A stretch of 64,000 nucleotides of DNA from Octopus sinensis (lineage: Eukaryota): contig NW_021836176.1 in assembly GCF_006345805.1 (NCBI RefSeq), positions 1 to 64,000 of the forward strand. Reading direction: 5' to 3'. The notes under the pieces were generated by a model. It was given only the letters and a program-made list of their open reading frames with translations, was not told where the DNA came from and ran no database searches. Both the position numbers and the translations under genes were made by a program. This document shows positions 17,125 to 63,764 of the stretch, one piece after another. The stretch's first letter is position 1, and the number at the start of each line of letters is the position of its first letter.

Positions 17125-17220
<96 letters not shown>

Positions 17221-17440: not shown

Positions 17441-17590
17441 GAGTGTGTGTGTGTGTGTGTGTTCTTTTATTCTCTGTAAACTTGGTGCTTATTCTTTTGG
17501 TCTCTTCAGCTGAACTGCTAAGTTTTGAGGATATAAACACGTTTTTGGCAGGATTTTTACAGCTGGATGGCCTTCCTAACACCAACCATT

Positions 17591-17748
17591 CATTGAGTTA
17601 ATCCTGCATTATCTTGTAGCTTTGAGATTTCACTGATGTAATTGTTTGTTATTTTTTTTTTAAAATGGCATTGTAGAGTGAGTGTGAGAAGCTAGATCTG
17701 GCCAGTAGAAAATGTTAACCTGATATGGCCAATTTAAGCACCAAAAAT
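17591..17748 (-). mobile_element. Inverted, diverged 5' part of MITE family 1, abutting the array at a shared TTAA
   Basis: Reverse complement reads ttaa-atttttggtgcttaaattggccatatc...ggccagatctagcttctcacactcactctacaatgccatt...gaaatctcaaagctacaagataatgcaggattaa. Confidence 0.75.
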
Positions 17749-17752
17749 TTAA

Positions 17753-20700
17753 CCCTTTAGCATTTAAACCAACCATATCGTGCTCAAATATCCGACAGGG
17801 TTTACATTTGACCCAGCAAGATCCAGCCTCTCACACCTACCCTACAATGTCATTCTAAAAATAAACAATCACATCATTGAAATCTCAAATCTATGAGATA
17901 ATGCATGATTAATTCAAAACAAGGCCAGATCCATCCTCTCACACCTACCCTACAATGTCATTCTAAAAATAAACAATCACATCATTGAAATCTCAAATCT
18001 ATGAGATAATGCATGATTAATTCAAAACAAGGCCAGATCCATCCTCTCACACCTACCCTACAATGTCATTCTAAAACTAAACAATCACATCATGGAAATC
18101 TCAAATCTATGAGATAATGCATGATTAATTCAAAACAAGGCCAGATCCATCCTCTCACACCTACCCTACAATGTCATTCTAAAAATAAACAATCACATCA
18201 TTGAAATCTCAAAGCTATGAGATAATGCATGATTAATTCAAAACAAGGCCAGTTCCAGCCTCTCACACCTACCCTACAATGTCATGTTAAAAATAAACAA
18301 TCACATCATTGAAATCTCAAAGCTATGAGATAATGCATGATTAATTCAAAACAAGGCCAGATCCATCCTCTCACACCTACCCTACAATGTCATTCTAAAA
18401 ATAAACAATCACATCATTGAAATCTCAAATCTATGAGATAATGCATGATTAATTCAAAACAAGGCCAGATCCATCCTCTCACACCTACCCTACAATGTCA
18501 TTCTAAAAATAAACACATCATCATTGAAATCTCAATCTATGAGATAATGCATGATTATTCAAAACAAGGCCAGATCCATCCTCTCACACCTACCCTACAA
18601 TGTCATTCTAAAACTAAACAATCACATCATGGAAATCTCAAATCTATGAGATAATGCATGATTAATTCAAAACAGGCCAGATCCTCCTCTCACACCTACC
18701 CTACAATGTCATTCTAAAAATAAACAATCACATCATTGAAATCTCAAAGCTATGAGATAATGCATGATTAATTCAAAACAAGGCCAGTTCCAGCCTCTCA
18801 CACCTACCCTACAATGTCATGTTAAAAATAAACAATCACATCATTGAAATCTCAAAGCTATGAGATAATGCATGATTAATTCAAAACAAGGCCAGTTCCA
18901 GCCTCTCACACCTACCCTACAATGTCATGTTAAAATTAAACAATCACATCATTGAAATCTCAAAGCTATGAGATAATGTATGATTAATTCAAAACAAGGC
19001 CAGATCCATCCTCTCACACCTACTCTACAATGTCATTCTAAAAATAAACAATCACATCATTGAAATCTCAAAGATATGAGATAATGCATGATTAATTCAA
19101 AACAAGGCCAGATCCATCCTCTCACACCTACCCTACAATGTCATTCTAAAAATAAACAATCACATCATTGAAATCTCAAATCTATGAGATAATGCATGAT
19201 TAATTCAAAACAAGGCCAGATCCATACTCTCACACCTACCCTACAATGTCATTCTAAAAATAAACAATCACATCATTGAAATCTCAAAGCTATGAGATAA
19301 TGCATGATTAATTCAAAACAAGGCCAGATCCATCCTCTCACACCTACCCTACAATGTCATTCTAAAAATAAACAATCACATCATTGAAATCTCAAATCTA
19401 TGAGATAATGTATGATTAATTCAAAACAAGGCCAGATCCATCCTCTCACACCTACCCTACAATGTCATTCTAAAAATAAACAATCACATCATTGAAATCT
19501 CAAATCTATGAGATAATGCATGATTAATTCAAAACAAGGCCAGATCCATCCTCTCACACCTACCCTACAATGTCATTCTAGAAATAAACAATCACATCAT
19601 GGAAATCTCAAATCTATGAGATAATGCATGATTAATTCAAAACAAGGCCAGATCCATCCTCTCACACCTACCCTACAATGTCATTCTAAAAATAAACAAT
19701 CACATCATTGAAATCTCAAATCTATGAGATAATGCATGATTAATTCAAAACAAGGCCAGATCCAGCCTCTCACACCTACCCTACAATGTCATTCTAGAAA
19801 TAAACAATCACATCATGGAAATCTCAAATCTATGAGATAATGCATGATTAATTCAAAACAAGGCCAGATCCAGCCTCTCACACCTACCCTACAATGTCAT
19901 TCTAAAAATAAACAATCACATCATGGAAATCTCAAATCTATGAGATAATGCATGATTAATTCAAAACAAGGCCAGATCCAGCCTCTCACACCTACCCTAC
20001 AATGTCATTCTAAAAATAAACAATCACATCATGGAAATCTCAAAGCTATGAGATAATGCATGATTAATTCAAAACAAGGCCAGATCCATACTCTCACACC
20101 TACCTCACAATGTCATTCTAAAAATAAATAATCACATCATTGAAATCTCAAAGCTATGAGATAATGCATGATTAATTCAAAACAAGGCTAGATCCAGCCT
20201 CTCTCACCTATCCTACAATGTCCCTCTAAATATAAACAATCCCTACATTTGTGAGATAGTGTGTGGTTAATTTAAAGCAAAGTGAATAAATAAGAATTAT
20301 GTTTGACAGTGTATTCTGAATGCTAAGGAGTTAACCCCGTAGGATTTGAACCAGCAATATGCAGCTGAAATAGTCTGTCTGTTTTATGTTCAAACCAGCT
20401 GTGTCTGGCCCCTCACACCTACCCTAAAAAATGTCATTTTAAAGAGACAAAAAACAATTGTGTGATTGGAATCTCAAATCTGTAAGAAAATGCATGATTA
20501 ATTCAAAACAATGGTAAAATTTAAGCTTTATATTTCACATCATAGAAATCTTCAAGTTACAAGATAATGCATGATTAATTTGAAACAATAGGACTAAATA
20601 CGGACTACATTTGACAGAATAATATGAATTTTATTTCAGTTATGTTCAAACTGCCCAGATCCATCCTCTCACTCATACCCTACAATGTCATTCTTAAAAT

Positions 20701-23700
20701 AAATAATCACATCTTTGAAATCTCAACGCTATGAGATAATGCATGATTAATTCAAAACAAGGCCACATCCTGCCTCTCACACCTACCCTACGATGTCATT
20801 CTCAAATAAAAACAATCACATCATTGAAATCTCAAAGCTATGAGATAATGCATGTTTAATTCAAAAAAAGGCCAGATCCAGCTTCTCACACCTACCCTAC
20901 AATGTCATTCTAAAAATAAACAATCACATCATTGAAATCTCAAAGCTATGAGATAATGCATGATTAATTCAAAACAAGGCCACCTCTTGCCTCTCACACC
21001 TACCCTACGATGTCATTCTCAAATAAAAACAATCACATCATTGAAATCTCAAAGCTATGAGATATTGCATGATTAATTCAAAACAAAGCTTGATCCAGCC
21101 TCTCACACCTACCCTACAATGTCATTCTAAAATAAATAATCACATCATAGAAATCTCAACGCTATGAGATAATGCATGATTAATTCAAAACAAGGCCACC
21201 TCCTGCCTCTCACACCTACCCTACAATGTCATTCTAAAAATAAACAATCACATCATTGAAATCTCAAAGCTGTGAGATAATGCATGATTAATTCAAAACA
21301 AGGCTAGATCAAGCCTCTCACACCTACCCTACAATGTCATTTTAAAATAAACAATCACATCATTGAAATCTCAAAGCTATGAGATAATGCATGATTAATT
21401 CAAAACAAGGCCACCTCCTGCCTCTCACACCTACCCTACAATGTCATTCTAAAAATAAACAATCACATCATTGAAATCTCAAAGCTGTGAGATAATGCAT
21501 GATTAATTCAAAACAAGACCAGATCCTGCCTCTCACACCTACCTCACAATGTCATTCTAAAAATAAACAATCGCATCATTGAAATCTCAAAGCTATGAGA
21601 TAATGCATGATTAATTCAAAACAAGACCAGATCCTGCCTCTCACACCTACCCTACAATGTCATTCTAAAAATAAACAATCACATCATTGAAATCTCAAAC
21701 TGTGAGATAATGCATGATTAATTCAAAACAAGGCCGGATCCTGTCTCTCACACCTACCCTACAATGTCATTCTAAAATAAACAATCTCATCATTGAAATC
21801 TCAAGAAGTGAGATAATGCATGATTAATTCAAAACAAGGCCAGATCCTGTCTCTCACACCAACCCTACAATGTCATTCTAAAAATAAACAATCACATCAT
21901 TGAAATCTCAAAGCTATAAGATAATGCATGATTAATTTAAAACAAGGCCAGATCCTGTCTCTCACACCTACCCTACAATGTCATTCTAAAAATAAACAAT
22001 CTCATCATTGAAATCTCAAAGCTGTGAGATAATGCATGATAAATTCAAAACAAGTCCAGATCCTGTCTCTCACACCTACCCTACAATGTCATTCTAAAAA
22101 TAAACAATCACATCATTGAAATCTCAAAGCTATGAGATAATACATGATTAATTCAAAACAAGGCCAGATCCTGTCTCTCACACCTACCCTACAATGTCAT
22201 TCTAAAAATAAACAATCACATCATTGAAATCTCAAAGCTATGAGATAATGCATGATTAATTCAAAACAAGGCCGGATCCTGTCTCTCACACCTACCCTAC
22301 AATGTCATTCTAAAAATAAACAATCACATCATTGAAATCTCAAAGCTATGAGATAATGCATGATTAATTCAAAACAAGGCCAGATCCTGTCTCTCACACC
22401 TACCCTACAATGTCATTCTAAAAATAAACAATCACATCATTGAAATCTCAAAGCTATGAGATAATGCATGATTAATTCAAAACAAGTCCAGATCCTGTCT
22501 CTCACACCTACCCTACAATGTCATTCTAAAAATAAACAATCTCATCATAGAAATCTCAAAGCTATGAGATAATGCATGATTAATTCAAAACGAGGCCACC
22601 TCCTGCCTCTCACACCTACCCTACAATGTCATTCTAAAATTAAACAATCTCATCATTGAAATATCAAAGCTATGAGATAATGCATGAGTAATTCAAAATA
22701 AGGCCACATCCAGCCTCTCACACCTACCCTACAATGTCATTCTAAAAATAAACAATCACATCATTGAAATCTCAAAGCTATGAGATAATGCATGATTAAT
22801 TCAAAACAAGGCCAGATCCAGCCTCTCACACCTACCCTACAATGTCATTCTAAAAATAAACAATCACATCATTGAAATCTGAAATCTATGAGATAATGCA
22901 TGATTAATTCAAAACAAGGCCAGATCCAGCCTCTCACACCTACCCTACAATGTCATTCTAAAAATAAACAATCACATCATTGAAATCTCAAATCTATGAG
23001 ATAATGCATGATTAATTCAAAACAAGGCCAGATCCATCCTGTCACACCTACCCTACAATGTCATTCTAAAAATAAACAATCACATCATGGAAATCTCAAA
23101 GCTATGAGATAATGCATGATTAATTCAAAACAAGGCCAGATCCATCCTCTCACACCTACCCTACAATGTCATTCTAAAAATAAACAATCACATCATTGAA
23201 ATCTCAAATCTATGAGATAATGCATGATTAATTCAAAACAATGCCACATCCATCCTCTCACACCTACCCTACAATGTCATTCTGAAAATAAACAATCACA
23301 TCATGGAAATCTCAAATCTATGAGATAATGCATGATTAATTCAAAACAAGGCCAGATCCAGCCTCTCACACCTACCCTACAATGTCATTCTAAAAATAAA
23401 CAATCACATCATTGAAATCTCAAAGATATGAGATAATGCATGATTAATTCAAAACAAGGCCAGATCCATCCTCTCACACCTACCCTACAATGTCATTCTA
23501 AAAATAAACAATCACATCATTGAAATCTCAAAGATATGAGATAATGCATGATTAATTCAAAACAAGGCCAGATCCATCCTCTCACACCTACCCTACAATG
23601 TCATTCTAAAAATAAACAATCACATCATTGAAATCTCAAATCTATGAGATAATGCATGATTAATTCAAAACAAGGCCAGATCCAGCCTCTCACACCTACC

Positions 23701-26700
23701 CTACAATGTCATTCTAAAAATAAACAATCACATCATGGAAATCTCAAAGCTATGAGATAATGCATGATTAATTCAAAACAAGGCCAGATCCATCCTCTCA
23801 CACCTACCTCACAATGTCATACTAAAAATAAATAATCACATCATTGAATTCTCAAAGCTATGAGATAATGCATGATTAATTCAAAACAAGGCTAGATCCA
23901 GCCTCTCTCACCTATCCTACAATGTCCCTCTAAATATAAACAATCCCTACATTTGTGAGATAGTGTGTGGTTAATTTAAAGCAAAGTGAATAAATAAGAA
24001 TTATATTTGACAGTGTATTCTGAATGCTAAGGAGTTAACCCCGTAGGATTTGAACCAGCAATATGCAGCTGAAATTGTCTGTCTGTTTTATGTTCAAACC
24101 AGCTGTGTCTGGCCCCTCACACCTACCCCTAAAAAATGTCATTTTAAAGAGACAAAAAACAATTGTGTGATTGGAATCTCAAATCTGTAAGAAAATGCAT
24201 GATTAATTCAAAACAATGGTAAAATTTAAGCTTTATATTTCACATCATAGAAACCTTAAAGTTACAAGATAATGCATGATTAATTTGAAACAAGAGGACT
24301 AAATACGGACTACATTTGACAGAATAATATGAATTTTATTTCAGTTATGTTCAAACTGCCCAGATCCATCCTCTCACTCATACCCTACAATGTCATTCTT
24401 AAAATAAATAATCACATCTTTGAAATCTCAACGCTATGAGATAATGCATGATTAATTCAAAACAAGGCCACATCCTGCCTCTCACACCTACGATGTCATT
24501 CTCAAATAAAAACAATCACATCATTGAAATCTCAAAGCTATGAGATAATGCATGATTAATTCAAAACAAGGCCAGATCCAGCTTCTCACACCTACCCTAC
24601 AATGTCATTCTAAAAATAAACAAGCACATCATTGAAATCTCATAGCTATGAGATAATGCATGATTAATTCAAAACAAGACCGGATCCTGCCTCTCACACC
24701 AACCCTACAATGTCATTCTAAAAATAAATAATCACATCATTGAAATCTCAAAGCTATAAGATAATGCATGATTAATTCAAAACAAGGCCAGATCCATCCT
24801 CTCACACCTACCCTACAATGTCATTCTAAAAATAAACAATCACATCATTGAAATCTCAAAGCTATGAGATAATGCATTATTAATTCAAAACAAGGCCAGA
24901 TCCTGCCTCTCACACTTACCCTACAATGTCATTCTAAAAATAAACAATCACATCATTGAAATCTCAAAGCCGTGAGATAATGCATGATTAATTCAAAACA
25001 AGGCCAGATCCTGCCTCTCACACCTACCCTACAATGTCATTCTAAAAATAAACAATCACATCATTGAAATCACAAAGCTGTGAGATAATGCATGAATAAT
25101 TCAAAACAAGGCCGGATCCTGTCTCTCACACCTACCTCACAATGTCATTCTAAAAATAAACAATCGCATCATTGAAATCTCAAAGCTATGAGATAATGCA
25201 TGATTAATTCAAAACAAGACCAGATCCTGCCTCTCACACCTACCCTACAATGTCATTCTAAAAATAAACAATCACTTCATTGAAATCTCAAAGCTGTGAG
25301 ATAATGCATGATTAATTCAAAACAAGGCCAGATCCTGTCTCTCACACCTACCCTACAATGTCATTCTAAAAATAAACAATCACATAATTGAAATCTCAAA
25401 GCTGTGAGATAATGCATGATTAATTCAAAACAAGGCCAGATCCAGTCTCTCACACCTGCCCTACAATGTCATTCTAAAAATAAACAATCACATCATTGAA
25501 ATCTCAAAGCTGTGAGATAATGCATAATTAATTCAAAACAAGACTAGATCCTGTCTCTCACACCTACCCTACAATGTCATTCTAAAAATAAACAATCACA
25601 TCATTGAAATCTCAAAGCTGTGAGATAATGCATGATTAATTCAAAACAAGGCCGGATCCTGTCTCTCACACCTACCCTACAATGTCATTCTAAAAATAAA
25701 CAATCTCATCATTGAAATCTCAAATCTATGAGATAATGCATGATTAATTCAAAACAAGGCCAGATCCAGCCTCTCACACCTACCCTACAATGTCATTCTA
25801 AAAATAAACAATCACATCATGGAAATCTCAAAGCTATGAGATAATGCATGATTAATTCAAAACAAGGCCAGATCCATCCTCTCACACCTACCTCACAATG
25901 TCATACTAAAAATAAATAATCACATCATTGAAATCTCAAAGCTATGAGATAATGCATGATTAATTCAAAACAAGGCTAGATCCAGCCTCTCTTACCTATC
26001 CTACAATGTCCCTCTAAATATGAACAATCCCTACATTTGTGAGATAGTGTGTGGTTAATTTAAAGCAAAGTGAATAAATAAGAATTATGTTTGACAGTGT
26101 ATTCTGAATGCTAAGGAGTTAACCCCGTAGGATTTGAACCAGCAATATGCAGCTGAAATAGTCTGTCTGTTTAATGTTCAAACCAGCTGTGTCTGGCCCC
26201 TCACACCTACCCCTAAAAAATGTCATTTTAAAGAGACAAAAAACAATTGTGTGATTGGAATCTCAAATCTGTAAGAAAATGCATGATTAATTCAAAACAA
26301 TGGTAAAATTTAAGCTTTATATTTCACATCATAAAAACCTTAAAGTTACAAGATAATGCATGATTAATTTGAAACAATAGGACTAAATACGGACTACATT
26401 TGACAGAATAATATGAATTTTATTTCAGTTATGTTCAAACTGCCCAGATCCATCCTCTCACTCATACCCTACAATGTCATTCTTAAAATAAATAATCACA
26501 TCTTTGAAATCTCAACGCTATGAGATAATGCATGATTAATTCAAAACAAGGCGACATCCTGCCTCTCACACCTACGATGTCATTCTCAAATAAAAACAAT
26601 CACATCATTGAAATCTCAAAGCTATGAGATAATGCATGATTAATTCAAAACAAGGCCAGATCCAGCTTCTCACACCTACCCTACAATGTCATTCTAAAAA

Positions 26701-29700
26701 TAAACAAGCACATCATTGAAATCTCATAGCTATGAGATAATGCATGATTAATTCAAAACAAGACCGGATCCTGCCTCTCACACCAACCCTACAATGTCAT
26801 TCTAAAAATAAATAATCACATCATTGAAATCTCAAAGCTATAAGATAATGCATGATTAATTCAAAACAAGGCCAGATCCATCCTCTCACACCAACCCTAC
26901 AATGTCATTCTAAAAATAAACAATCACATCATTGAAATCTCAAAGCTATGAGATAATGCATGATTAATTCAAAACAAGGCCAGATCCTGCCTCTCACACT
27001 TACCCTACAATGTCATTCTAAAAATAAACAATCACATCATTGAAATCTCAAAGCCGTGAGATAATGCATGATTAATTCAAAACAAGGCCAGATCCTGCCT
27101 CTCACACCTACCCTACAATGTCATTCTAAAAATAAACAATCACATCATTGAAATCACAAAGCTGTGAGATAATGCATGATTAATTCAAAACAAGGCCGGA
27201 TCCTGCCTCTCACACCTACCTCACAATGTCATTCTAAAAATAAACAATCGCATCATTGAAATCTCAAAGCTATGAGATAATGCATGATTAATTCAAAACA
27301 AGACCAGATCCTGCCTCTCACACCTACCCTACAATGTCATTCTAAAAATAAACAATCACTTCATTGAAATCTCAAAGCTGTGAGATAATGCATGATTAAT
27401 TCAAAACAAGGCCAGATCCTGTCTCTCACACCTACCCTACAATGTCATTCTAAAAATAAACAATCACATCATTGAAATCTCAAAGCTGTGAGATAATGCA
27501 TGATTAATTCAAAACAAGGCCAGATCCTGTCTCTCACACCTGCCCTACAATGTCATTCTAAAAATAACAATCACATCATTGAAATCTCAAAGCTGTGAGA
27601 TAATGCATAATTAATTCAAAACAAGACTAGATCCTGTCTCTCACACCTACCCTACAATGTCATTCTAAAAATAAACAATCACATCATTGAAATCTCAAAG
27701 CTGTGAGATAATGCATGATTAATTCAAAACAAGGCCGGATCCTGTCTCTCACACCTACCCTACAATGTCATTCTAAAAATAAACAATCTCATCATTGAAA
27801 TCTCAAGACTGTGAGATAATGCATGATTAATTCAAAACAAGGCCAGATCCTGTCTCTCACACCAACCCTTCAATGTCATTCTAAAAATAAACAATCACAT
27901 CATTGAAATCTCAAAGCTGTGAGATAATGCATGATTAATTCAAAACAAGGCCAGATCCTGTCTCTCACACCAACCCTACAATGTCATTCTAAAAATAAAC
28001 AATCACATCATTGAAATCTCAAAGCTGTGAGATAATGCATGACTAATTCAAAACAAGGCCAGATCCTGTCTCTCACACCAACCCTACAATGTCATTCTAA
28101 AAATAAACAATCACATCATTGAAATCTCAAAGCTGTGAGATAATGCATGATTAATTCAAAACAAGGCCAGATCCTGTCTCTCACACCAACCCTACAATGT
28201 CATTCTAAAAATAAACAATCACATCATTGAAATCTCAAAGCTGTGAGATAATGCATGACTAATTCAAAACAAGGCCAGATCCTGTCTCTCACACCAACCC
28301 TACAATGTCATTCTAAAAATAAACAATCACATCATTGAAATCTCAAAGCTGTGAGATAATGCATGACTAATTCAAAACAAGGCCAGATCCTGTCTCTCAC
28401 ACCAACCCTACAATGTCATTCTAAAAATAAACAATCACATCATTGAAATCTCAAAGCTGTGAGATAATGCATGACTAATTCAAAACAAGGCCAGATCCTG
28501 TCTCTCACACCAACCCTACAATGTCATTCTAAAAATAAACAATCACATCATTGAAATCTCAAAGCTATAAGATAATGCATGATTAATTCAAAACAAGGCC
28601 AGATCATGCCTCTCACACCTACCCTACAATGTCATTCTAAAAATAAACAATCACATCATTGAAATCTCAAAGCTATGAGATAATGCATGATTAATTCAAA
28701 ACAAGGCCAGCTCCTGTCTCTCACACCTACCCTACAATGTCATTCTAAAAATAAACAATCTCATCATTGAAATCTCAAAGCTGTGAGATAATGCATGATT
28801 AATTCAAAACAAGTCCAGATCCTGTCTCTCACACCTACCCTACAATGTCATTCAAAAAATAAACAATCACATCATTGAAATCTCAAAGCTATGAGATAAT
28901 GCATGATTAATTCAAAACAAGGCCAGATCCTGCCTCTCACACCCACCCTACAATGTCATTCTTAAAATAAACAATTTCATCATAGAAATCTCAAAGCTAT
29001 GAGATAATGCATGATTAATTCAAAACGAGGCCACCTCCTGCCTCTCACACCTACCCTACAATGTCATTCTAAAATTAAACAATCTCATCATTGAAATCTC
29101 AAAGCTATGAGATAATGCATGAGTAATTCAAAACAAGGCCGGATCCTGTCTCTCACACCTACCCTACAATGTCATTCTAAAATTAAACAATCGCATCATT
29201 GAAATCTCAAAGCTATGAGATAATGCATGATTAATTCAAAACAAGGCCAGATCCTGCCTATCACACCTATCTCACAATGTCATTCTAAAAATAAACAATC
29301 ACATCATTGAAATCTCAAAGCTATGAGATAATGCATGATTAATTCAAAACAAGGCTAGATCCAGCCTCTCACACCTACTCTACAATGTCATTCTAAAAAT
29401 AAACAATCACATCATGGAAATCTCAAAGCTATGAGATAATGCATGATTAATTCAAAACAAGGCCAGATCCATCCTCTCACACCTACCTCACAATGTCATA
29501 CTAAAAATAAATAATCACATCATTGAAATCTCAAAGCAATGATATAAGCATGATTAATGCATTAATTCAAACAAGGCTATCCAGCCTCTCTCACCTATCC
29601 TACAATGTCCCTCTAAATATAAACAATCCCTACATTGTGAGATAGTGTGTGGTTAATTTAAAGCAAAGTGAATAAATAAGATTATGTTTGACAGTGTATT

Positions 29701-32700
29701 CTGAATGCTAAGGAGTTAACCCCGTAGGATTTGAACCAGCAATATGCAGCTGAAATAGTCTGTCTGTTTTATGTTCAAACCAGCTGTGTCTGGCCCCTCA
29801 CACCTACCCCTAAAAACGTCATTTTAAAGAGACAAAAAACAATTGTGTGATTGGAATCTCAAATCTGTAAGAAAATGCATGATTAATTCAAAACAATGGT
29901 AAAATTTAAGCTTTATATTTCACATCATAGACACCTTAAAGTTACAAGATAATGCATGATTAATTTGAAACAATAGGACTAAATACGGACTACATATGAC
30001 AGAATAATATGAATTTTATTTCAGTTATGTTCAAACTGCCCAGATCCATCCTCTCACTCATACCCTACAATGTCATTCTTAAAATAAATAATCACATCTT
30101 TGAAATCTCAACGCTATGAGATAATGCATGATTAATTCAAAACAAGGCCACATCCTGCCTCTCACACCTACGATGTCATTCTCAAATAAAAACAATCACA
30201 TCATTGAAATCTCAAAGCTATGAGATAATGCATGATTAATTCAAAACAGGCCAGATCCAGCTTCTCACACCTACCCTACAATGTCATTCTAAAAATAAAC
30301 AAGCACATCATTGAAATCTCATAGCTATGAGATAATGCATGATTAATTCAAAACAAACCGGATCCTGCCTCTCACACCTACCCTACAATGTCATACTAAA
30401 AATAAATAATCACATCATTGAAATCTCAAGCTATAAGATAATGCATGATTATTCAAAACAAGGCCAGATCCATCCTCTCACCCTACCCTACAATGTCATT
30501 CTAAAAATAAACAATCACATCATTGAAATCTCAAAGCTATGAGATAATGCATGATTAATTCAAAACAAGGCCAGATCCTGCCTCTCACACTTACCCTACA
30601 ATGTCATTCTAAAAATAAACAATCACATCATTGAAATCTCAAAGCCGTGAGATAATGCATGATTAATTCAAAACAAGGCCAGATCCTGCCTCTCACACCT
30701 ACCCTACAATGTCATTCTAAAAATAAAGAATCACATCATTGAAATCTCAAAGCTGTGAGATAATGCATGATTAATTCAAAACAAGGCCGGATCCTGTCTC
30801 TCACACCTACCTCACAATGTCATTCTAAAAATAAACAATCGCATCATTGAAATCTCAAAGCTATGAGATAATGCATGATTAATTCAAAACAAGACCAGAT
30901 CCTGCCTCTCACACCTACCCTACAATGTCATTCTAAAAATAAACAATCACTTCATTGAAATCTCAAAGCTGTGAGATAATGCATGATTAATTCAAAACAA
31001 GGCCAGATCCTGTCTCTCACACCTACCCTACAATGTCATTCTAAAAATAAACAATCACATCATTGAAATCTCAAAGCTGTGAGATAATGCATGATTAATT
31101 CAAAACAAGGCCAGATCCTGTCTCTCACACCTGCCCTACAATGTCATTCTAAAAATAAACAATCACATCATTGAAATCTCAAAGCTGTGAGATAATGCAT
31201 AATTAATTCAAAACAAGACTAGATCCTGTCTCTCACACCTACCCTACAATGTCATTCTAAAAATAAACAATCACATCATTGAAATCTCAAAGCTGTGAGA
31301 TAATGCATGATTAATTCAAAACAAGGTCGGATCCTGTCTCTCACACCTACCCTACAATGTCATTCTAAAAATAAACAATCTCATCATTGAAATCTCAAGA
31401 CTGTGAGATAATGCATGATTAATTCAAAACAAGGCCAGATCCTGTCTCTCACACCAACCCTACAATGTCATTCTAAAAATAAACAATCACATCATTGAAA
31501 TCTCAAAGCTGTGAGATAATGCATGATTAATTCAAAACAAGACCAGATCCTGTCTCTCACACCAACCCTACAATGTCATTCTAAAAATAAACAATCACAT
31601 CATTGAAATCTCAAAGCTGTGAGATAATGCATGACTAATTCAAAACAAGGCCAGATCCTGTCTCTCACACCAACCCTACAATGTCATTCTAAAAATAAAC
31701 AATCACATCATTGAAATCTCAAAGCTGTGAGATAATGCATTTAATTCAAAACAAGGCCAGATCCTGTCTCTCACACCACCCTACAATGTCATTCTAAAAA
31801 TAAACAATCACATCATTGAATCTCAAAGCTGTGAGATAAGGCATGACTAATTCAAAACAAGGCCAGATCCTGTCTCTCACACCAACCCTACAATGTCATT
31901 CTAAAAATAAACAATCACATCATTGAAATCTCAAAGCTGTGAGATAATGCATGACTAATTCAAAACAAGGCCAGATCCTGTCTCTCACACCAACCCTACA
32001 ATGTCATTCTAAAAATAAACAATCACATCATTGAAATCTCAAAGCTGTGAGATAATGCATGACTAATTCAAAACAAGGCCAGATCCTGTCTCTCACACCA
32101 ACCCTACAATGTCATTCTAAAAATAAACAATCACATCATTGAAATCTCAAAGCTATAAGATAATGCATGATTAATTCAAAACAAGGCCAGACCATGCCTC
32201 TCACACGTACCCTACAATGTCATTCTAAAAATAAACAATCACATCTTTGAAATCTCAAAGCTATGAGATAATGCATGATTAATTCAAAACAAGGCCAGAT
32301 CCTGTCTCTCACACCTACCCTACAATGTCAATCTAAAAATAAACAATCACATCATGGAAATCTCAAAGCTATGAGATAATGCATGATTAATTCAAAACAA
32401 GGCCAGATCCATCCTCTCACACCTACCTCACAATGTCATACTAAAAATAAATAATCACATCATTGAAATCTCAAAGCTATGAGATAATGCATGATTAATT
32501 CAAAACAAGGCTAGATCCAGCCTCTCTCACCTATCCTACAATGTCCCTCTAAATATAAACAATCCCTACATTTGTGAGATAGTGTGTGGTTAATTTAAAG
32601 CAAAGTAAAATAAGAATTATATTTGACAGTGTATTCTGAATGCTAAGGAGTTAACCCCGAGGATTTGAACCAGCAATATGCAGCTGAAATTGTCTGCTGT

Positions 32701-35700
32701 TTATGTTCAAACCAGCTGTGTCTGGCCCCTCACACCTACCCCTAAAAAATGTCATTTAAAGAGACAAAAAAATTGTGTGATTGGAATCTCAAATCTGTAA
32801 GAAAATGCATGATTAATTCAAAACAATGGTAAAATTTAAGCTTTATATTTCACATCATAGAAACCTTAAAGTTACAAGATAATGCATGATTAATTTGAAA
32901 ACAAGAGGACTAAATACGGACTACATTTGACAGAATAATATGAATTTTATTTCAGTTATGTTCAAACTGCCCAGATCCATCCTCTCACTCATACCCTACA
33001 ATGTCATTCTCAAATAAAAACAATCACATCATTGAAATCTCAAAGCTATGAGATAATGCATGATTAATTCAAAACAAGGCCAGATCCAGCTTCTCACACT
33101 ACCCTACAATGTCATTCAAAAATAACAAGCAATCATTGAAATCTCAAGCTATGAGATAATGCATGATTAATTCAAAACAAGACCGGATCCTGTCTCTCAC
33201 ACCTACCCTACAATGTCATTCTAAAAATAAATAATCACATCATTGAAATCTCAAAGCTATAAGATAATGCATGATTAATTCAAAACAAGGCCAGATCCAT
33301 CCTCTCACACCTACCCTACAATGTCATTCTAAAAATAAACAATCACATCATTGAAATCTCAAAGCTATGAGATAATGCATGATTAATTCAAAACAAGGCC
33401 AGATCCTGCCTCTCACACTTACCCTACAATGTCATTCTAAAAATAAACAATCACATCATTGAAATCTCAAAGCCGTGAGATAATGCATGATTAATTCAAA
33501 ACAAGGCCAGATCCTGCCTCTCACACCTACCCTACAATGTCATTCTAAAAATAAACAATCACATCATTGAAATCTCAAAGCTGTGAGATAATGCATGATT
33601 AATTCAAAACAAGGCCGGATCCTGCTCTCACACCTACCTACAATGTCATTCTAAAAATAAACAATCGCATCATTGAAATCTCAAAGCTATGAGATAATGC
33701 ATGATTAATTCAAAACAGACCAGATCCTGCCTCTCACACCTACCCTACAATGTCATTCTAAAAATAAACAATCACTTCATTGAAATCTCAAAGCTGTGAG
33801 ATAATGCATGATTAATTCAAAACAAGGCCAGATCCTGTCTCTCACACCTACCAACAATGTCATTCTAAAAATAAACAATCACATCATTGAAATCTCAAAG
33901 CTGTGAGATAATGCATGATTAATTCAAAACAAGGCCGGATCCTGTCTCTCACACCTACCCTACAATGTCATTCTAAAAATAAACAATCTCATCATTGAAA
34001 TCTCAAGACTGTGAGATAATGCATGATTAATTCAAACAAGGCCAGATCCTGTCTCTCACACCAACCTACAATGTCATTCTAAAATAAACAATCACATCAT
34101 TGAATCTCAAAGCTGTGAGATAATGCATGACTAATTCAAACAAGGCAGATCCTGTCTCTCACACCAACCCTACAATGTCATTCTAAAAATAAACATCATC
34201 ACATCATTGAAATCTCAAAGCTGTGAGATAATGCATGATAATTCAAAACAAGGCCAGATCCTGTCTCTCACACCAACCCTACAATGTCATTCTAAAAATA
34301 AACAATCACATCATTGAAATCTCAAAGCTATAAGATAATGCATGATTAATTCAAAACAAGGCCAGATCCAGCCTCTCACACCTACCCTACAATGTCATTC
34401 TAAAAATAAACAATCACATCATTGAAATCTCAAAGCTATGAGATAATGCATGATTAATTCAAAACAAGGCCAGATCCTGTCTCTCACACCTACCTACAAT
34501 GTCATTCTAAAAATAAACAATCTCATCATTGAAATCTCAAAGCTGTGAGATAATGCATGATTAATTCAAAAACAAGGTCAGATCCTGTCTCTCACACCTA
34601 CCCTACAATGTCATTCTAAAAATAAACAATCACATCATTGAAATCTCAAAGCTATGAGATAATGCATGATTAATTCAAACAAGGCCAGATCCTGCCTCTA
34701 CACCCCACCCTACAATGTCATTCTAAAATAAACAATTTCACTCATAGAAATCTCAAAGCTATGAGATAATGCATGATTAATTCAAAACGAGGCCACCTCC
34801 TGCCTCTCACACCTACCCTACAATGTCATTCTAAAATTAAACAATCTCATCATTGAAATCTCAAAGCTATGAGATAATGCATGAGTAATTCAAAACAAGG
34901 CCGGATCCTGTCTCTCACACCTACCCTACAATGACATTCTAAAATTAAACAATCGCATCATTGAAATCTCAAAGCTATGAGATAATGCATGATTAATTCA
35001 AAACAAGGCCAGATCCTGCCTATCAGACCTATCTCACAATGTCATTCTAAAAATAAACAATCACATCATTGAAATCTCAAAGCTATGAGATAATGCATGA
35101 TTAATTCAAAATAAGGCCCATCCAGCCTCTCACACCTACCCTACAATGTCATTCTAAAAATAAATAATCACATCTTTCAAATCTCAACGCTATGAGACAA
35201 TGCATGATTAATTCAAAACAAGGCCAGGTCCAGCCTCTCACACCCACCCTATAATGTCATTTTAAAATAAACAATCACATCATTGAAATCTCAAGCTATG
35301 AGATAATGCATGATTAATTCAAAACAAGGCTAGATCAAGCCTCTCACACCCACCCTACAATGTCATTCTAAAAATAAACAATCACATCATTGAAATCTCA
35401 AAGCTATGAGATAATGCATGATTAATTCAAACAAGGCAGATCCAGCCTCTCACACCTACCCTACAATGTCATTCTAAAATAAACAATCACATCATTGAAA
35501 TCTCAAAGCTATGAGATAATGCATGATTAATTCAAAACAAGGCCAGATCCAGCCTCTCACACCTACCCTACAATGTCATTCTAAAAATAAACAATCGCAT
35601 CATTGAAATCTCAAAGCTATGAGATAATGCATGATTAATTCAAAATAAGGCCACATCCAGCCTCTCACACCTACCCTACAATGTCATTCTAAAAATAAAC

Positions 35701-38610
35701 AATCACATCATTGAAATCTCAATGCTATGAGATAATGCATGATTAATTCAAAACAAGGCCAGATCCTGCATCTCACACCTGCCCTACAATGTCATTTTAA
35801 AATAAACAATCGCATCATTGAAATCTCAAGACTGTGAGATAATGCATGATTAATTCAAAACAAGGCCACATCCAGCCTGTCACACCTACCCTACAATGTC
35901 ATTCTAAAAATAAACAATCACATCATTGAAATCTCAAAGCTGTGAGATAATGCATGATTAATACAAAACAAGGCCAGATCCACCCTCTCACACCTACCCT
36001 ACAATGTCATTCTAAAAATAAACAATCACATCATTGAAATCTCAATGCTATGAGATAATGCATGATTAATTCAAAACAAGGCCAGATCCTGCCTCTCACA
36101 CCTGCCCTACAATATCATTCTAAAAATAAACAATCACATCATTGAAATCTCAATGCTATGAGATAATGCATGATTAATTCAAAACAAGGCCAGATCCTGC
36201 CTCTCACACCTATCCTACAATGTCATTCTAAAAATAAATAATCACATCATTGAAATCTCAATGCTATGAGATAATGCATGATTAATTCAAAACAAGGCCA
36301 GATCCAGCCTCTCACACCTACCCTACAATGTCATTCTAAAAATAAACAATCACATCATTGAAATCTCAATGCTATGAGATAATGCATGATTAATTCAAAA
36401 CAAGGCCAGATCCTGCCTCTCACACCTGCCCTACAATGTCATTTTAAAATAAACAATCGCATCATTGAAATCTCAAGACTGTGAGATAATGCATGATTAA
36501 TTCAAAACAAGGCCAGATCCAGCCTCTCACACCTACCCTAAAATGTCATTCTAAAAATAAACAATCACATCATTGAAATCTCAAAGCTGTGAGATAATGC
36601 ATGATTAATTCAAAACAAGGCCAGATCCAGCCTCTCACACCTACCCTACAATGTCATTCTAAAAATAAATAATCACATCATTGAAATCACAATGCTATGA
36701 AATCTCAATGCTATGATTAATTCAAAACAAGGCTAGATCAAGCCTCTCACACCCACCCTACAATGTCATTTTAAAAATAATCACATTATTTAAATCTCAA
36801 AGCTATGAGATAATGCAGGATTAATTGAAAACAAGGCCAGATCCAGCCTCTCACACATACCCTACAATGTCATTCTAAATATAAACAATCACATTATTTA
36901 AATCTCAAATCTATGAGATAATGCATGATTAATTCAAAACAAGGCCAGATCCAGCCTCTCACACCTACCCTACAATGTCATTCTAAAAATAAATAATCAC
37001 ATCATTGAAATCTCAAAGCTATGAGATAATGCATGATTAATTCAAAACAATGCCACATCCAGCCTCTCACACCTACCCTACAATGTCATTCTAAAAATAA
37101 ACAATCACATCATTGAAATCTCAATGCTATGAGATAATGCATGATTAATTCAAAACAATGCCACATCCAGCCTCTCACACCTACCCTACAATGTCATTCT
37201 AAAAATAAACAATCACATCATTGAAATCTCAATGCTATGAGATAATGCATGATTAATTCAAAACAAGGCCAGATCCTGCCTCTCACACCTACCCTACAAT
37301 GTCATTCTAAAAATAAACAATCACATCATTGAAATCTCAATGCTATGAGATAATGCATGATTAATTCAAAACAATGCCACATCCAGCCTCTCACACCTAC
37401 CCTACAATGTCATTCTAAAAATAAACAATCACATCATTGAAATCTCAATACTATGAGATAATGCATGATTAATTCAAAACAAGGCCAGATCCTGCCTCTC
37501 ACACCTACCCTACAATGTCATTCTAAAAATAAACAATCACATCATTGAAATCTCAATGCTATGAGATAATGCATGATTAATTCAAAAGAAGGCCAGATCC
37601 TGCCTCTCACACCTACCCTACAATGTCATTCTAAAAATAAACAATCACATCATTGAAATCTCAATGCTATGAGATAATGCATGATTAATTCAAAACAATG
37701 CCACATCCAGCCTCTCACACCTACACTACAATGTCATTCGAAAAATAAACAATCACATCATTGAAATCTCAATGCTATGAGATAATGCATGATTAATTCA
37801 AAACAATGCCACATCCAGCCTCTCACACCTACCCTACAATGTCATTCTAAAAATAAACAATCACATCATTGAAATCTCAATGCTATGAGATAATGCATGA
37901 TTAATTCAAAACAAGGCCAGATCCTGCCTCTCACACCTACCCTACAATGTCATGCTAAAAATAAACAATCACATCATTGAAATCTCAATGCTATGAGATA
38001 ATGCATGATTAATTCAAAACAATGCCACATCCAGCGTCTCACACCTACCCTTCAATGTCATTCTAAAAATAAACAATCACATCATTGAAATCTCAATGCT
38101 ATAAGATAATGCATGATTAATTCAAAACAATGCCACATCCAGCCTCTCACACCTACCCTACAATGTCATTCTAAAAATAAACAACCACGTCATTGAAATC
38201 TCAATTCTATGAGATAATGCATGATTAATTCAAAACAATGCCACATCCAGCCTCTCACACCTACCCTACAATGTCATTCTAAAAATAAACAATCACATCA
38301 TTGAAATCTCAATGCTATGAGATAATGCATGATTAATTCAAAACAAGGCCAGATCCAGCTTCTCACACCTACCCTACAATGTCATTCTAAAAATAAACAA
38401 TCACATCATTGAAATCTCAATGCTATGAGATAATGCATGATTAATTCAAAACAAGACCGGACCCTGCCTCTCACACCTACCCTACAATGTCATTCTAAAA
38501 ATAAACAATCACATCATTGAAATCTCAAAGCTATGAGATAATGCATGATTAATTCAAAACAATGTGAATAAATAAGCATTGCATTGGATAGAATATTCTA
38601 AATGCTAAAG
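17753..38610 (+). repeat. MITE-derived satellite array: ~170 copies of a 108-bp monomer with five internal MITE end-to-start junction blocks
   Basis: Monomer AGGCCAGATCCAGCCTCTCACACCTACCCTACAATGTCATTCTAAAAATAAACAATCACATCATTGAAATCTCAAAGCTATGAGATAATGCATGATTAATTCAAAACA (starts 17921 and 18029, spacing 108). Begins TTAA|ccctttagcatt. Junction TTAAs at 20331, 24035, 26119, 29716 and 32651. Ends with subterminal gtgaataaataagcatt...aatgctaaag. Copy number is an estimate from length. Confidence 0.95.
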
Positions 38611-38910
38611 TTATTCTCTCAAAATATTCTAATTAATTTGAGTTCAAACTGGTCAGATCCAGCCTCTTACATTTCTCCTATGACGTCATTCTGGAAAAGA
38701 AAATGGAATTTGTAACTGATTCACAAAGCTATGAGATAATGCATGAATAATTCAAAACAATGAACGTAAAGAAAGGTCACACTTGCCAAGATAATCTGAA
38801 TGCTAAAGTTATTCTACCAAAATATTGTTTTATGTTCAAACCAGCCAAACCCAGCCTCTCACACCCAACAATGCCTTTGTAAAAACAATCACATGATTAA
38901 AATCTCAAAT
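38611..38910 (+). repeat. Degenerate MITE-1 units continuing the array
   Basis: Two diverged monomers joined by atgctaaag|ttattct..caaaatatt at 38610 and ~38808; cut off by a SINE-A at 38912. Confidence 0.75.
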
Positions 38911-38911: not shown

Positions 38912-39081
38912 GGCGCAGGAGTGGCTGTGTGGTAAGTAGCTTGCTAACCAACCACATGGTTCCGGGTTCAGTCCCACTGTGTGGCACCTTGGGCAAGTGT
39001 CTTCTGCTTTAGCCCCGGGCCGACCAATGCCTTGTGAGTGGATTTGTAGACGGAAACTGAAAGAAGCCTGTCGTATATATG

Positions 39082-39141
<60 letters not shown>

Positions 39142-62482: not shown

Positions 62483-62650
62483 GTGTCCTTAATTTCTGTG
62501 CTGAACATAAACTTACTTGATTCCAAAATCAACAGCTTAAATCAGATTCTGTAATGTTACACAACCAAATTTTATTCTCCGAAAACAAATGAAAAATTAA
62601 TTTATGCTTAACATCCAGAATACCTGTAAAGCTAGTCTTTTGTATTTTAT

Positions 62651-62949
62651 AATAATAATAATAATAATTGTGTACAGTGCTCAGGTGCACTACAACTCAT
62701 CTAATGTGTATGTATAATCAGGTGTAGTTTCGGCGGATTTCGGAGAGCATGAGGGCCTTAAAGGATGCAGTGTCATGGCAGTCAACAACTGACGCAGGCA
62801 GTTTGTTCCATGCTTCAGCAACTCTGAGCGTGAAAAAATGTTTCTGAAAGTCATGGGAGCTCTGTTGTTTTCTGACTTTGTAGGCATGTCCACGTTGTGT
62901 GGACACATGGAGATCAAAAAGGTGTTCAGTGTTGTGGTTGGTGAGGTTG
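62651..62949 (-). pseudogene. CR1 LINE 3' end with (ATT)n tail and a 31-bp flanking duplication
   Basis: QRGHAYKVRKQQSSHDFQKHFFTLRVAEAWNKLPASVVDCHDTASFKALM (RGH..K...FF..RV...WN.LP motif). Duplication at 62620-62650 / 62950-62980. Confidence 0.88.
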
Positions 62950-63099
62950 ATACCTGTAAGGCTAGTCTTTTGTATTTTATAATAATAATAATAATAATAA
63001 TAATATTGTGTACAGTGCTCAGGTGCACTACAACTCATCTAAAGTGTATATATAATCAGGTGTAGTTTCGGCGGATTTCGGAAAGCATGAGGGCCTTAA

Positions 63100-63764
63100 C
63101 CCTTTAGCATTCAAACCGGCCATATCCGGCCAAAATATTTAACCTGTTTTATATTGAAACTGACCAGATCTCACCTCTCACCTCAGCCCTACCATGTCAT
63201 TCTAAAACTAAAAAATCACATCACTGAAATATCTAAACTACAAGATAATGCATGATTAATTCAAAAGAATATAAATCAAAATCAAACCGAATCAAAATAG
63301 ATGAACATCAATGGAATTTGTATCTTTGTGGTACCAGTGCCGGTGGCACATAAGAAAGCCATCCGAACGTGGCTGTAGCCAGTACCGCATTGACTGGCCT
63401 CTGTGCTGTGGGCACGTAACAAACACCATCCAATCATGGCCGTCTGCCAGCCTCGTCTGGCACCTGTGTCGGTGGCACATAAAAAACACCATCCGAGCGT
63501 GGCCGTTCGCCAGCCCCATCTGGCACCTGTGTCGGTGGCACATAAAATCACCCACTACACTCTCGGAGTGGTTGGCGTTAGGAGGGGCATCCAGCTGTAG
63601 AAACACTGCCAGATCTGACTGGCCTGGTGCAGCCTTCGGGCTCCCTAGACCCCAGTTGAACCGTCCAACCCATACTAGCATGGAAAGCGGACGTTAAACG
63701 ATGATGATGATGATGATAAACAAACAAACATCACATTTGATAGAATAATCTGAACACTAAAGGG
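63100..63764 (+). mobile_element. piggyBac-type MITE family 1, single-monomer copy (contains a nested RTE 3' UTR)
   Basis: TTAA TSD at 63096-63099 and 63765-63768. TIR ccctttagcattca / tgaacactaaaggg (12/14). Empty site gagggccTTAAaggatgcag at 62751-62770. One copy of the 108-bp monomer lies at ~63165-63270. Confidence 0.92.
63277..63716 (+). mobile_element. RTE-LINE 3' UTR copy nested in the MITE
   Basis: Modules gtgtcggtggcacataaaa, terminus gcatggaaagcggacgttaaacgatgatgatg. Confidence 0.85.

What the first reader, a model, noticed from the sequence alone, without database searches (positions are those of the whole stretch)
17753..38610. A 21-kb satellite born inside a piggyBac-type MITE, with its unexpanded progenitor in the same window
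Seen: the array starts with TTAA plus the TIR ccctttagcatt and the MITE's subterminal 60 bp, and ends with the MITE's right subterminal sequence. Between them the internal 108-bp segment is repeated ~170 times. The single-monomer copy at 63100-63764 has TIRs, a TTAA TSD and an empty-site paralogue. Known: TTAA TSD with CCC...GGG ends is the piggyBac signature, and TE-derived satellites are documented (e.g. Drosophila Tetris and DINE arrays, bivalve pearl/DTC84). I do not know of a description of this family. Inference: a snapshot of MITE-to-satellite transition in a cephalopod.
Basis: partly seen in the sequence, partly recalled or inferred. Interest (0 to 1): 0.85.

Follow-up and report, generated by a model that had tools for sequence, protein, structure and literature searches.

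The report
Octopus MITE-derived 108-bp tandem array
A 21-kb block of about 170 copies of a 108-bp unit in an octopus genome grew out of the middle of a small piggyBac-type transposon; this route to satellite DNA is already known from frogs, flies and bivalves, so it is a clear but fairly ordinary new example.

Summary
A 108-bp array spans 17819-38562. It starts at TTAA plus CCCTTTAGCATT plus a 66-bp MITE head, and it ends in the MITE tail. The copy at 63100-63764 has TIRs, TTAA duplications and an exact empty-site paralogue at 62758-62761.

- The array is not continuous. About 170 regular monomers (94% alike) lie in six runs separated by five near-identical 465-bp blocks. Each block holds a complete tail-TTAA-head junction of two abutting MITEs.
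- The right end lacks the terminal GG and the TTAA. It runs into two more degenerate MITE units whose palindromic TIR-TTAA-TIR centre is deleted. So the locus is a cluster of at least six MITE-derived units, not one MITE.
- The 63100 copy is a paralogue (81-84% in the monomer) carrying a nested 440-bp repeat. It is not the progenitor.

Three Octopus vulgaris loci hold three full 220-230-bp single-monomer copies with the same ends, so one monomer is the usual state in this small sample. The array holds no SINE, whereas 34 loci of three repeat families lie in the 43 kb outside it, so it is young or fast-homogenising.

MITE-to-satellite conversion is documented (Xmix/Xstir, miDNA4). I rate this a new member of a known kind. 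No transposase link was found, and read support was not testable.

The parts
17546..17748 (-). Degenerate inverted MITE copy. It lies head-to-head with the array's left end and shares the TTAA at 17749. On the minus strand: head 17707-17748, one monomer 17593-17706, then a fragment of the nested-type repeat at 17546-17591.
   Evidence: BLAST to the 63096 copy; 79% to the monomer consensus; alignment; HMM positions 12-175, E 2e-24.
17749..17752 (.). TTAA shared by the inverted copy and the array's left end.
17753..17818 (+). MITE head H2: TIR CCCTTTAGCATTTAAA plus subterminal sequence.
17819..20189 (+). Monomer run 0: 22 x 108 bp. This is the most homogeneous run (96.5% within the run).
20190..20654 (+). 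Junction block J-a. In order: diverged monomer M* (20190-20277); tail T3 (20278-20330); TTAA (20331-20334); head H3 beginning CCCCGTAGGATTTG (20335-20404); diverged monomer M' (about 20405-20512); start of a tail; second half of a monomer (20535-20587); truncated tail (to about 20629); the 3' part of a head (to 20654).
20655..23893 (+). Monomer run 1: 30 monomers.
23894..24359 (+). Junction block J-b (TTAA at 24035-24038).
24360..25977 (+). Monomer run 2: 15 monomers.
25978..26443 (+). Junction block J-c (TTAA at 26119-26122).
26444..29578 (+). Monomer run 3: 28-29 monomers. Its start is 98-99% identical to the starts of runs 2 and 4.
29579..30039 (+). Junction block J-d (TTAA at 29716-29719).
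30040..32512 (+). Monomer run 4: 23 monomers.
32513..32970 (+). Junction block J-e (TTAA at 32651-32654).
32971..38559 (+). Monomer run 5: 51-52 monomers, with private variants (for example alignment column 73 is T in 19 of 51).
38560..38610 (+). MITE tail T2. It ends ...TCTAAATGCTAAAG; the terminal GG and the TTAA are missing.
38611..38810 (+). Degenerate long unit R1: 3' part of a head, one monomer and a tail. It joins T2 through a junction that lacks about 28 bp, the TIR-TTAA-TIR palindrome.
38811..38910 (+). Degenerate long unit R2: 3' part of a head plus monomer positions 1-71. It has the same deleted junction as R1 and is cut off by a SINE.
38917..39070 (+). tRNA-like SINE copy that truncates the MITE cluster on the right. 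No monomer remainder follows it.
62620..62825 (+). Empty-site paralogue of the 63096 insertion site, with a single TTAA at 62758-62761.
63096..63768 (+). Single-monomer MITE copy with its two TTAA duplications. The element CCC...GGG spans 63100-63764. Head 63100-63165, monomer 63166-63269, tail split by a nested insertion.
63278..63717 (+). Nested, unrelated ~440-bp repeat inside the tail of the 63100 copy. It has 63-bp internal tandem units and a (GAT)n tail. It is absent from the Octopus vulgaris full-length copies.
2442..2513 (+). Another family member: tail ...GAACACTAAAGGG plus TTAA (2510-2513). The left part has degenerated.

Best explanation
The region 17546-38910 is a nest of copies of a ~230-bp non-coding, piggyBac-type MITE family of octopus. 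Each copy has a 66-bp head with TIR CCCTTTAGCATTYARA, a 108-bp middle segment M, a ~55-bp tail and a TTAA target duplication.

Shown by the sequence:
- At least six MITE-derived units lie side by side. One is inverted and shares the TTAA at 17749. The others are head-to-tail.
- One tail-TTAA-head junction is intact. Three other junctions have lost the palindromic TIR-TTAA-TIR centre.
- About 170 copies of M (94% alike) fill the space between head H2 and tail T2.
- A 465-bp block containing the intact junction recurs five times at 97.6-99.1% identity. The monomers flanking it are up to 98-99% alike between runs.

Inferred history:
1. MITEs were mobilised in trans by a piggyBac-like transposase and landed in, or were duplicated at, the TTAA that flanks a resident copy.
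2. In the single-copy element, M is bracketed by an imperfect direct repeat: TTCAAAC-TG at the end of the head and TTCAAAAC-AA-TG at the end of M. Slippage or unequal exchange between the two repeats made the first dimer. Its junction, TTCAAAACAA(T/G)GCC|AGATCC, is exactly what the array shows.
3. Unequal crossing-over expanded and homogenised the array.
4. Later unequal exchanges between monomers on either side of the intact junction duplicated multi-kb pieces. That produced the five junction blocks.

The array has no coding capacity and no detected RNA family. It is most likely a neutral, young tandem repeat rather than a functional element.
For: Array and ends.
TIR and TTAA above chance: 14 matches against 1.06 expected; 18-nt arms at 89%.
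Exact filled/empty site pair.
Family in Octopus vulgaris: three full single-monomer copies of 218-228 bp, plus partial copies ending in TTAA.
The nested repeat is secondary: the L001 copy aligns over positions 1-243 at 87% to the window copy with the nested repeat removed.
Junction blocks.
Deleted palindromic junctions.
Monomer statistics: mean pairwise identity 93.9%, no decay at the edges, local variants.
Recent multi-kb duplications: runs 2, 3 and 4 are 98-99% alike.
Array consensus is only 71-85% identical to dispersed monomers.
Flanking direct repeat and M|M junction. The T variant of the junction occurs in 10 monomers, 9 of them in the last run.
No SINE or other repeat in the 20.7-kb array, against 34 loci in the 43.3 kb outside; Poisson P(0) between about 1e-5 and 1e-7.
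No ORF of at least 110 aa in the array and no Rfam hit.
piggyBac hallmark of CC[C/T]T termini plus TTAA: PMC2872659.
Against: No piggyBac transposase and no autonomous partner with matching TIRs was found or could be searched for.
The right end of the array lacks the TIR tip and the TTAA, so a single bounded element cannot be shown.
Head H2 ends ...CAGCA before the first monomer, whereas the array junction carries ...GGCC. The first duplication may therefore have happened in a neighbouring unit rather than in the H2-bearing copy.
The microhomology origin is inferred from one junction type.
Array length and the 98-99% identical multi-kb duplicates could not be checked against reads.
Only about 104 kb of octopus DNA outside the array was sampled for other copies.
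Confidence: 0.8

Rival explanations
1. Reverse direction. The 108-bp satellite came first, and a MITE captured one monomer and spread it. The array would then be ancestral satellite that happens to be flanked by MITE halves.
For: Homology alone does not give a direction. Satellites carried inside mobile elements are known (review PMC9659126).
Against: All four full-length dispersed copies (63100, L001, two in L003) and the degenerate single-monomer units in the window (17593 inverted, R1, R2) carry just one monomer. They are old: 70-87% alike, and 71-85% to the array consensus. The array is 94% homogeneous and free of SINEs. The array's M|M junction is made of the last bases of the head joined to the end of M, as expected if the MITE was the template. 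Head and tail flank the array in the correct order and orientation.
Confidence: 0.06
2. The array is real, but its length and its five-fold higher-order structure are partly an assembly artefact (mis-tiling of long reads or merged haplotypes).
For: The multi-kb blocks are 98-99% identical. Several differences between junction blocks are 1-2-bp indels, as noisy long reads would leave.
Against: Monomers carry many private substitutions and run-specific variants. The spacings between junction blocks differ (3704, 2084, 3601 and 2934 bp). The blocks differ by 0.9-2.4%, more than polished consensus error would give.
Confidence: 0.1
3. The element belongs to Kolobok (T2-MITE-like), the other TTAA-targeting superfamily, not to piggyBac.
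For: Kolobok elements also duplicate TTAA. The closest functional precedent, Xmix/Xstir, is a Kolobok T2-MITE (PMC6004289).
Against: Kolobok and T2 termini are AGGRR or RR (PMC6004289). Every end here starts with C, mostly CCC. That matches the CC[C/T]T piggyBac motif and coral piggyBac TIRs such as CCCTTTAACGCCC (PMC2872659).
Confidence: 0.04

Closest known systems
Xmix MITE / Xstir tandem repeats of Xenopus laevis (Hikosaka & Kawahara 2004, as cited in PMC6004289, PMC2872659 and PMC9659126)
   Same: A TTAA-flanked MITE whose internal segment is amplified into tandem repeats between the element's own ends. The general picture is tandem repeats 'riding' on a MITE.
   Different: Xmix is a T2/Kolobok element with AGGRR termini. 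The octopus element has CCC termini of the piggyBac type. Xstir arrays are dispersed on many mobile copies; here only one array was seen, and it sits in a cluster of several abutting MITE units with a higher-order repeat that includes a TIR-TTAA-TIR junction.
miDNA4 MITE-borne satellite of Xenopus tropicalis (Scalvenzi & Pollet 2014, as summarised in PMC9659126)
   Same: Birth of a satellite monomer within a MITE, followed by tandem amplification and homogenisation.
   Different: miDNA4 is listed as a Tc1-mariner MITE and was documented genome-wide. Here the ends are TTAA/CCC and a single locus was examined.
Coral CMITE tandem arrays (Acropora; PMC2872659)
   Same: piggyBac-type MITEs (TTAA, CCCTTT... 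TIRs) that occur as tandem arrays of whole elements. The octopus locus likewise has head-to-tail whole units (T3-TTAA-H3, R1, R2).
   Different: CMITE arrays repeat the full ~100-bp MITE. In octopus the large expansion is of the internal 108-bp segment only, and most inter-unit junctions have lost the TIRs.
Bivalve pearl/CvA/BIV160 and Crassostrea Helentron-borne satDNA-like repeats (PMC7492417, PMC9659126)
   Same: Mollusc mobile elements with a core of tandem repeats between conserved flanks, which seed satellite-like arrays.
   Different: Those carriers are Helentron/Helitron-related and have neither TIRs nor TTAA duplication. The octopus element has both, plus an exact empty site.
Drosophila DINE-1 central tandem repeats and Tetris TIR-220 arrays (as listed in PMC9659126)
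   Same: Expansion of part of a non-autonomous class II element into satellite arrays.
   Different: Different superfamilies (Helitron, foldback) and different parts of the element amplified.

Membership tests
piggyBac-superfamily non-autonomous element (MITE) | TTAA target-site duplication | tested here: met
   TTAA lies on both sides of the 63100 copy, with a single TTAA in the empty paralogue. TTAA is present at 17749, 2510 and the five junction blocks. In Octopus vulgaris, L003:13216-13440 has TTAA on both sides, L001 has TTAA on one side and TAAA on the other, and the L002 tails end in TTAA.
piggyBac-superfamily non-autonomous element (MITE) | 12-19-bp terminal inverted repeats beginning CC[C/T]T (criterion as stated in PMC2872659) | tested here: met
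   CCCTTTAGCATTCA against its partner TGAACACTAAAGGG: 18-nt arms including the TTAA, 89% complementary. There are 13 family ends in the window against about 1 expected.
piggyBac-superfamily non-autonomous element (MITE) | Evidence of past mobility (filled site versus empty site) | tested here: met
   The joined flanks align to 62620-62825 at 92% over 214 bp, across the junction. Insertion and precise excision cannot be told apart.
piggyBac-superfamily non-autonomous element (MITE) | Small, non-coding and multi-copy | tested here: met
   218-235 bp without the nested repeat. There are no ORFs. Four full copies and several partial copies were found in about 104 kb.
piggyBac-superfamily non-autonomous element (MITE) | An autonomous partner with matching TIRs that encodes a piggyBac (DDE_Tnp_1_7) transposase | not testable with these tools
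   There is no transposase ORF in the window, and no searchable octopus genome was available.
Kolobok / T2-MITE | Terminal AGGRR / RR motif next to the TTAA (PMC6004289) | tested here: not met
   All ends read TTAA-CCC..., or the diverged forms CCCC and CTCC.
TE-derived satellite DNA (Xmix/Xstir or miDNA4 type) | The monomer is homologous to an internal segment of the element, and the array is flanked by the element's own ends | tested here: met
   83.7% over 104 bp to 63166-63269. The head lies at 17753-17818 and the tail at 38560-38610. The right TIR tip and its TTAA are missing.
TE-derived satellite DNA (Xmix/Xstir or miDNA4 type) | Long arrays at many loci or high genomic abundance (satellite in the strict sense) | not testable with these tools
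   One array was seen. There is none in 61 kb of Octopus vulgaris DNA. Scans of metagenome and viral contigs were empty.
Helitron/Helentron-borne mollusc tandem repeats (pearl-like) | No TIRs and no target-site duplication | tested here: not met
   The element has TIRs and a 4-bp TTAA duplication.

The most novel reading that the evidence does not exclude
The leftmost unit (17749-20334, 2.6 kb) is a complete transposon. It has TTAA and a CCC-type TIR at both ends and carries 22 monomers. If units like this are still substrates for a piggyBac transposase, this family could spread ready-made satellite seeds around octopus chromosomes. The palindromic TIR-TTAA-TIR junctions left by insertion next to a resident copy would then act as fragile sites that drive array formation. 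That would be a transposase-coupled route to satellite birth in a lineage where satellites are essentially undescribed.
Probability: 0.15. Interest if true: 0.6.

Novelty: new member of a known kind. Interest (0 to 1): 0.4.

Why it matters
This locus gives a base-resolved example of how a satellite-like array starts from a transposon. Several stages survive side by side in one 64-kb window:
- the single-monomer element with a proven empty site;
- whole-element tandem units with intact and with deleted TIR junctions;
- the young 108-bp array and its multi-kb higher-order duplications.

It also defines an apparently abundant piggyBac-type MITE family for octopus repeat annotation, where SINEs dominate the literature. 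I found no satellite or MITE description for octopus in the held library. It does not reveal a new mechanism, because the same transition is documented in Xenopus, Drosophila and bivalves.

Tried and rejected
- Exact scans of metagenome contigs and viral contigs for the conserved monomer core ATAATGCATGATTAATTCAAAA gave 0 hits.
- ORF listing found no transposase and no credible gene in the window. All ORFs of at least 110 aa are translations of simple or interspersed repeats.
- ARAGORN and Rfam at gathering threshold found nothing. The SINE's tRNA-like head is therefore not recognised by these tools, and the monomer is not a known RNA.
- Two protein searches with repeat-derived ORFs returned only three Octopus vulgaris hypothetical proteins. 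They were useful for naming the host and for fetching 61 kb of comparison DNA, but too few for a real copy-number histogram.
- Literature searches found no description of this family or of any octopus satellite.
- I considered a short higher-order repeat of 2-10 monomers and rejected it. k-mer lags and identity by lag decay smoothly. Only kb-scale duplications (lags 2084, 3596 and 3704) stand out.
- I considered that the array edges keep older monomers. They do not: the first monomer is 98% identical to the consensus. The diverged monomers are those inside the junction blocks and in R1 and R2.
- The HMM used was partly built from window sequences. Its hits on those same pieces are by construction, so I relied on the Octopus vulgaris hits and on the BLAST and MAFFT alignments instead.


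Full report
**1. The observation**

Tandem Repeats Finder reports one dominant array at 17819-38562. The period is 108 bp, with 191 period-equivalents, 85% matches and a score of 26484.

- Immediately to the left lies TTAA (17749-17752), then CCCTTTAGCATTT and a 66-bp subterminal segment.
- The last monomer is followed by CAATGTGAATAAATAAGCATTGCATTGGATAGAATATTCTAAATGCTAAAG, ending at 38610.

The copy at the end of the window reads TTAA (63096-63099), then CCCTTTAGCATTC...GAACACTAAAGGG (63100-63764), then TTAA (63765-63768). The inverted-repeat finder gives 18-nt arms at 89% complementarity. The array consensus aligns to 63166-63269 at 83.7% over 104 bp.

The pattern TTAACCCTTTAGCATT with up to 3 mismatches occurs 14 times in the window, against 1.06 expected from shuffles. 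None of 100 shuffles reaches 14, and 13 of the 14 matches are ends of this family.

The 'empty-site paralogue' is real. Joining the two flanks of the 63096 copy gives a sequence that matches 62620-62825 at 92% over 214 bp, straight across the junction. The empty site reads GGGCC-TTAA-AGGATGCAG; the filled site reads GGGCC-TTAA-[element]-TTAA-AGGATGCAG.

**2.

The spacing of monomer hits is 108 bp for most monomers, but it breaks at five recurrent places. Aligning these places shows five copies of a ~465-bp block, at 20190-20654, 23894-24359, 25978-26443, 29579-30039 and 32513-32970. They are 97.6-99.1% identical to each other.

Each block contains, in order:
- a diverged monomer;
- a complete MITE tail ending GAATGCTAAGGAG;
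- TTAA;
- a complete MITE head beginning CCCCGTAGGATTTGAACC;
- another diverged monomer;
- half a monomer;
- a truncated tail;
- the 3' part of a head.

So two MITE copies abut at a shared TTAA inside the array, and that junction has been copied five times.

The regular monomers number 169 by nhmmer. They fall into six runs of about 22, 30, 15, 29, 23 and 52.

**3. The two ends of the cluster**

Right end. The tail stops at ...GCTAAAG, without the terminal GG and the TTAA. It is followed by two more degenerate units, each made of the 3' part of a head, one monomer and a tail (38611-38810 and 38811-38910). The second unit is cut at monomer position 71 by a tRNA-like SINE, and no remainder follows.

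I aligned these junctions with a canonical tail-TTAA-head junction. The tail-to-head joins at 38610 and 38810 are the canonical junction minus about 28 bp, which is exactly the palindromic TIR-TTAA-TIR centre. The join at the end of each junction block carries a larger deletion of the same region.

Left end. On the opposite strand, 17593-17748 is a further degenerate copy (head plus one monomer). It lies head-to-head with the array and shares the TTAA at 17749.

The locus is therefore a nest of at least six MITE-derived units, not one MITE. Only the first unit, 17749-20334, has both ends and both TTAAs intact.

**4. The family outside the array**

The 63100 copy is 665 bp long only because an unrelated ~440-bp repeat is nested in its tail at 63278-63717. 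That repeat has 63-bp internal tandem units, a (GAT)n end and 11 loci in the window.

An ORF of this nested repeat finds only Octopus vulgaris hypothetical proteins. A SINE-derived ORF does the same. The three O. vulgaris loci fetched through these proteins total 61 kb of GCA_951406725.2. They contain the following:
- Three full-length copies of 218-228 bp, each with one monomer: L001:12122-12349, L003:6453-6670 and L003:13216-13440.
- The L001 copy aligns to the window copy with the nested repeat removed, over positions 1-243 at 87%.
- L003:13216-13440 has TTAA on both sides.
- Three partial copies in L002. The two tail fragments (near 5781-5852 and 12121-12240) end in TTAA; the third (4243-4406) is a head plus one monomer.

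Another tail plus TTAA lies at 2442-2513 in the window.

Three conclusions follow:
- The host is an octopus.
- The family is dispersed and probably abundant. About 10 loci in about 104 kb is a rough figure.
- Its usual state in this sample is one monomer. All four full-length copies, and the degenerate single-monomer units in the window, have just one.

**5. Age and direction of origin**

- Dispersed copies are 70-87% identical to each other. Their monomers are 71-85% identical to the array consensus.
- Array monomers average 93.9% pairwise and about 96.5% to their consensus. There is no decay towards the edges: the first monomer is 98%.
- Variants are local. One substitution is confined to the last run (19 of 51), and others are concentrated in the first run. 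This is what unequal exchange between neighbours produces.
- The monomers that follow the second, third and fourth junction blocks are 98-99% identical position by position. Multi-kb self-matches occur at lags of 2084-3704 bp. The latest growth was therefore by duplication of kb-sized pieces that include the junction block.
- The 20.7-kb array contains none of the three interspersed repeat families that occupy 34 loci in the other 43.3 kb. The expected number is 16, or 6-12 under stricter counting; P(0) is 8e-8, or 2e-3 to 1e-5.

Together these results put the array well after the dispersal of the family, and they favour MITE to array over the reverse.

**6. How the first duplication probably arose (inference)**

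In the heads of the family, the bases before the monomer read GTTCAAAC-TG-GTC|AGATCC, with variants TGCCC, CAGCC and TGACC. The monomer ends AATTCAAAAC-AA-TG|TGAATAAAT, which runs into the tail. The array junction is AATTCAAAAC-AA-GG-CC|AGATCC.

The 108-bp unit is thus bracketed in the single-copy element by an imperfect direct repeat, TTCAAA(A)C(AA)TG. The array junction is the end of the monomer fused to the last bases of the head, just past that repeat.

The predicted ancestral form...CAATGCC..., survives in 10 monomers, 9 of them in the last run. Slippage or unequal exchange between the two short repeats is therefore the most economical origin.

The present left head, H2, ends ...CAGCA rather than ...GGCC. 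This hints that the first dimer formed in a neighbouring unit, and that recombination later joined the array to H2. That point is weak.

**7. Superfamily**

The element meets the hallmarks quoted for piggyBac and its MITEs: a TTAA duplication, an exact empty site and 13-16-bp TIRs beginning CCCT (PMC2872659). That paper also lists coral piggyBac TIRs such as CCCTTTAACGCCC.

Kolobok, the other TTAA-targeting superfamily, has AGGRR/RR termini (PMC6004289), which are not present here.

No transposase is encoded in the window, and I could not search an octopus genome for the autonomous partner. 'piggyBac-type' therefore rests on end structure only.

**8. Comparison with known cases, and verdict**

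Amplification of an internal MITE segment into tandem repeats is documented for Xmix/Xstir in Xenopus laevis (cited in PMC6004289, PMC2872659 and PMC9659126) and for miDNA4 in X. tropicalis (PMC9659126). Tandem arrays of whole piggyBac-type MITEs are described in corals (PMC2872659). Mollusc examples involve Helentron-type carriers (PMC7492417, PMC9659126).

I found no description of this octopus family or of any octopus satellite in the held library. Octopus repeat papers emphasise SINEs (PMC8967140).

Verdict:
The origin from the MITE family, the piggyBac-type ends and the cephalopod host all hold. 'Inside one MITE' and 'progenitor in the same window' are oversimplified.
- The phenomenon is a new member of a known kind.

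Not testable here:
- read-level support for the array length;
- genome-wide abundance;
- any chromatin or centromere role;
- the identity of the mobilising transposase.

Noticed in passing
window 63278-63717; also 45340-45779(-), 53714-54085, 54333-54917, 50407-50586 and others: An abundant ~440-bp interspersed repeat with internal 63-67-bp tandem units and a (GAT)n tail. It has 11 loci in the window, and one copy is nested in the tail of the 63100 MITE. ORFs read from it match Octopus vulgaris 'hypothetical proteins'.
   Followed up: partly
window 17546-17591 (-) next to 17593-17706 (-): A fragment of that same repeat abuts the monomer of the inverted degenerate MITE copy, in the same order and orientation as in the 63100 copy. 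This could be two independent insertions near the same spot. It could also be a composite MITE-plus-repeat subfamily that transposed as a unit.
   Followed up: no
window 39726-40115 as the type copy; 13 + 10 loci, e.g. 16951-17440, 38917-39372, 47549-48113, 50670-51968: A composite SINE: a tRNA-like part A, a (TA)n(TG)n microsatellite and a part B. It is very dense in the window but absent from the array. Neither ARAGORN nor Rfam recognises it.
   Followed up: partly
window 62620-63832: The empty and filled sites belong to a local ~330-bp tandem duplication (92-95% identity). The MITE insertion, or a precise excision, therefore post-dates that duplication.
   Followed up: partly
window 17819-38562: The array's + strand is strongly C- and A-rich (GC skew -0.32 to -0.44, AT skew about +0.2, GC 34-35%). 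Each monomer carries one TTAA at position 91, so the array offers 217 TTAA targets, yet it holds no insertion.
   Followed up: no
window 1-1297, 10105-11209, 42702-43796, 44620-45324, 55230-56478: Other sizeable tandem repeats: a 162-bp CT-rich unit x8; a 292-bp unit x3.7 built from SINE-like sequence; a 457-bp AT-rich unit; (AGGT)n of 700 bp; (TA)n of 1.2 kb.
   Followed up: no
window 20513-20587 in each junction block: The second MITE of the junction block carries an extra half monomer (positions 51-105) after a partial tail. This is a separate small internal duplication or a 5'-truncated extra unit, and it suggests the family is prone to internal rearrangement.
   Followed up: partly
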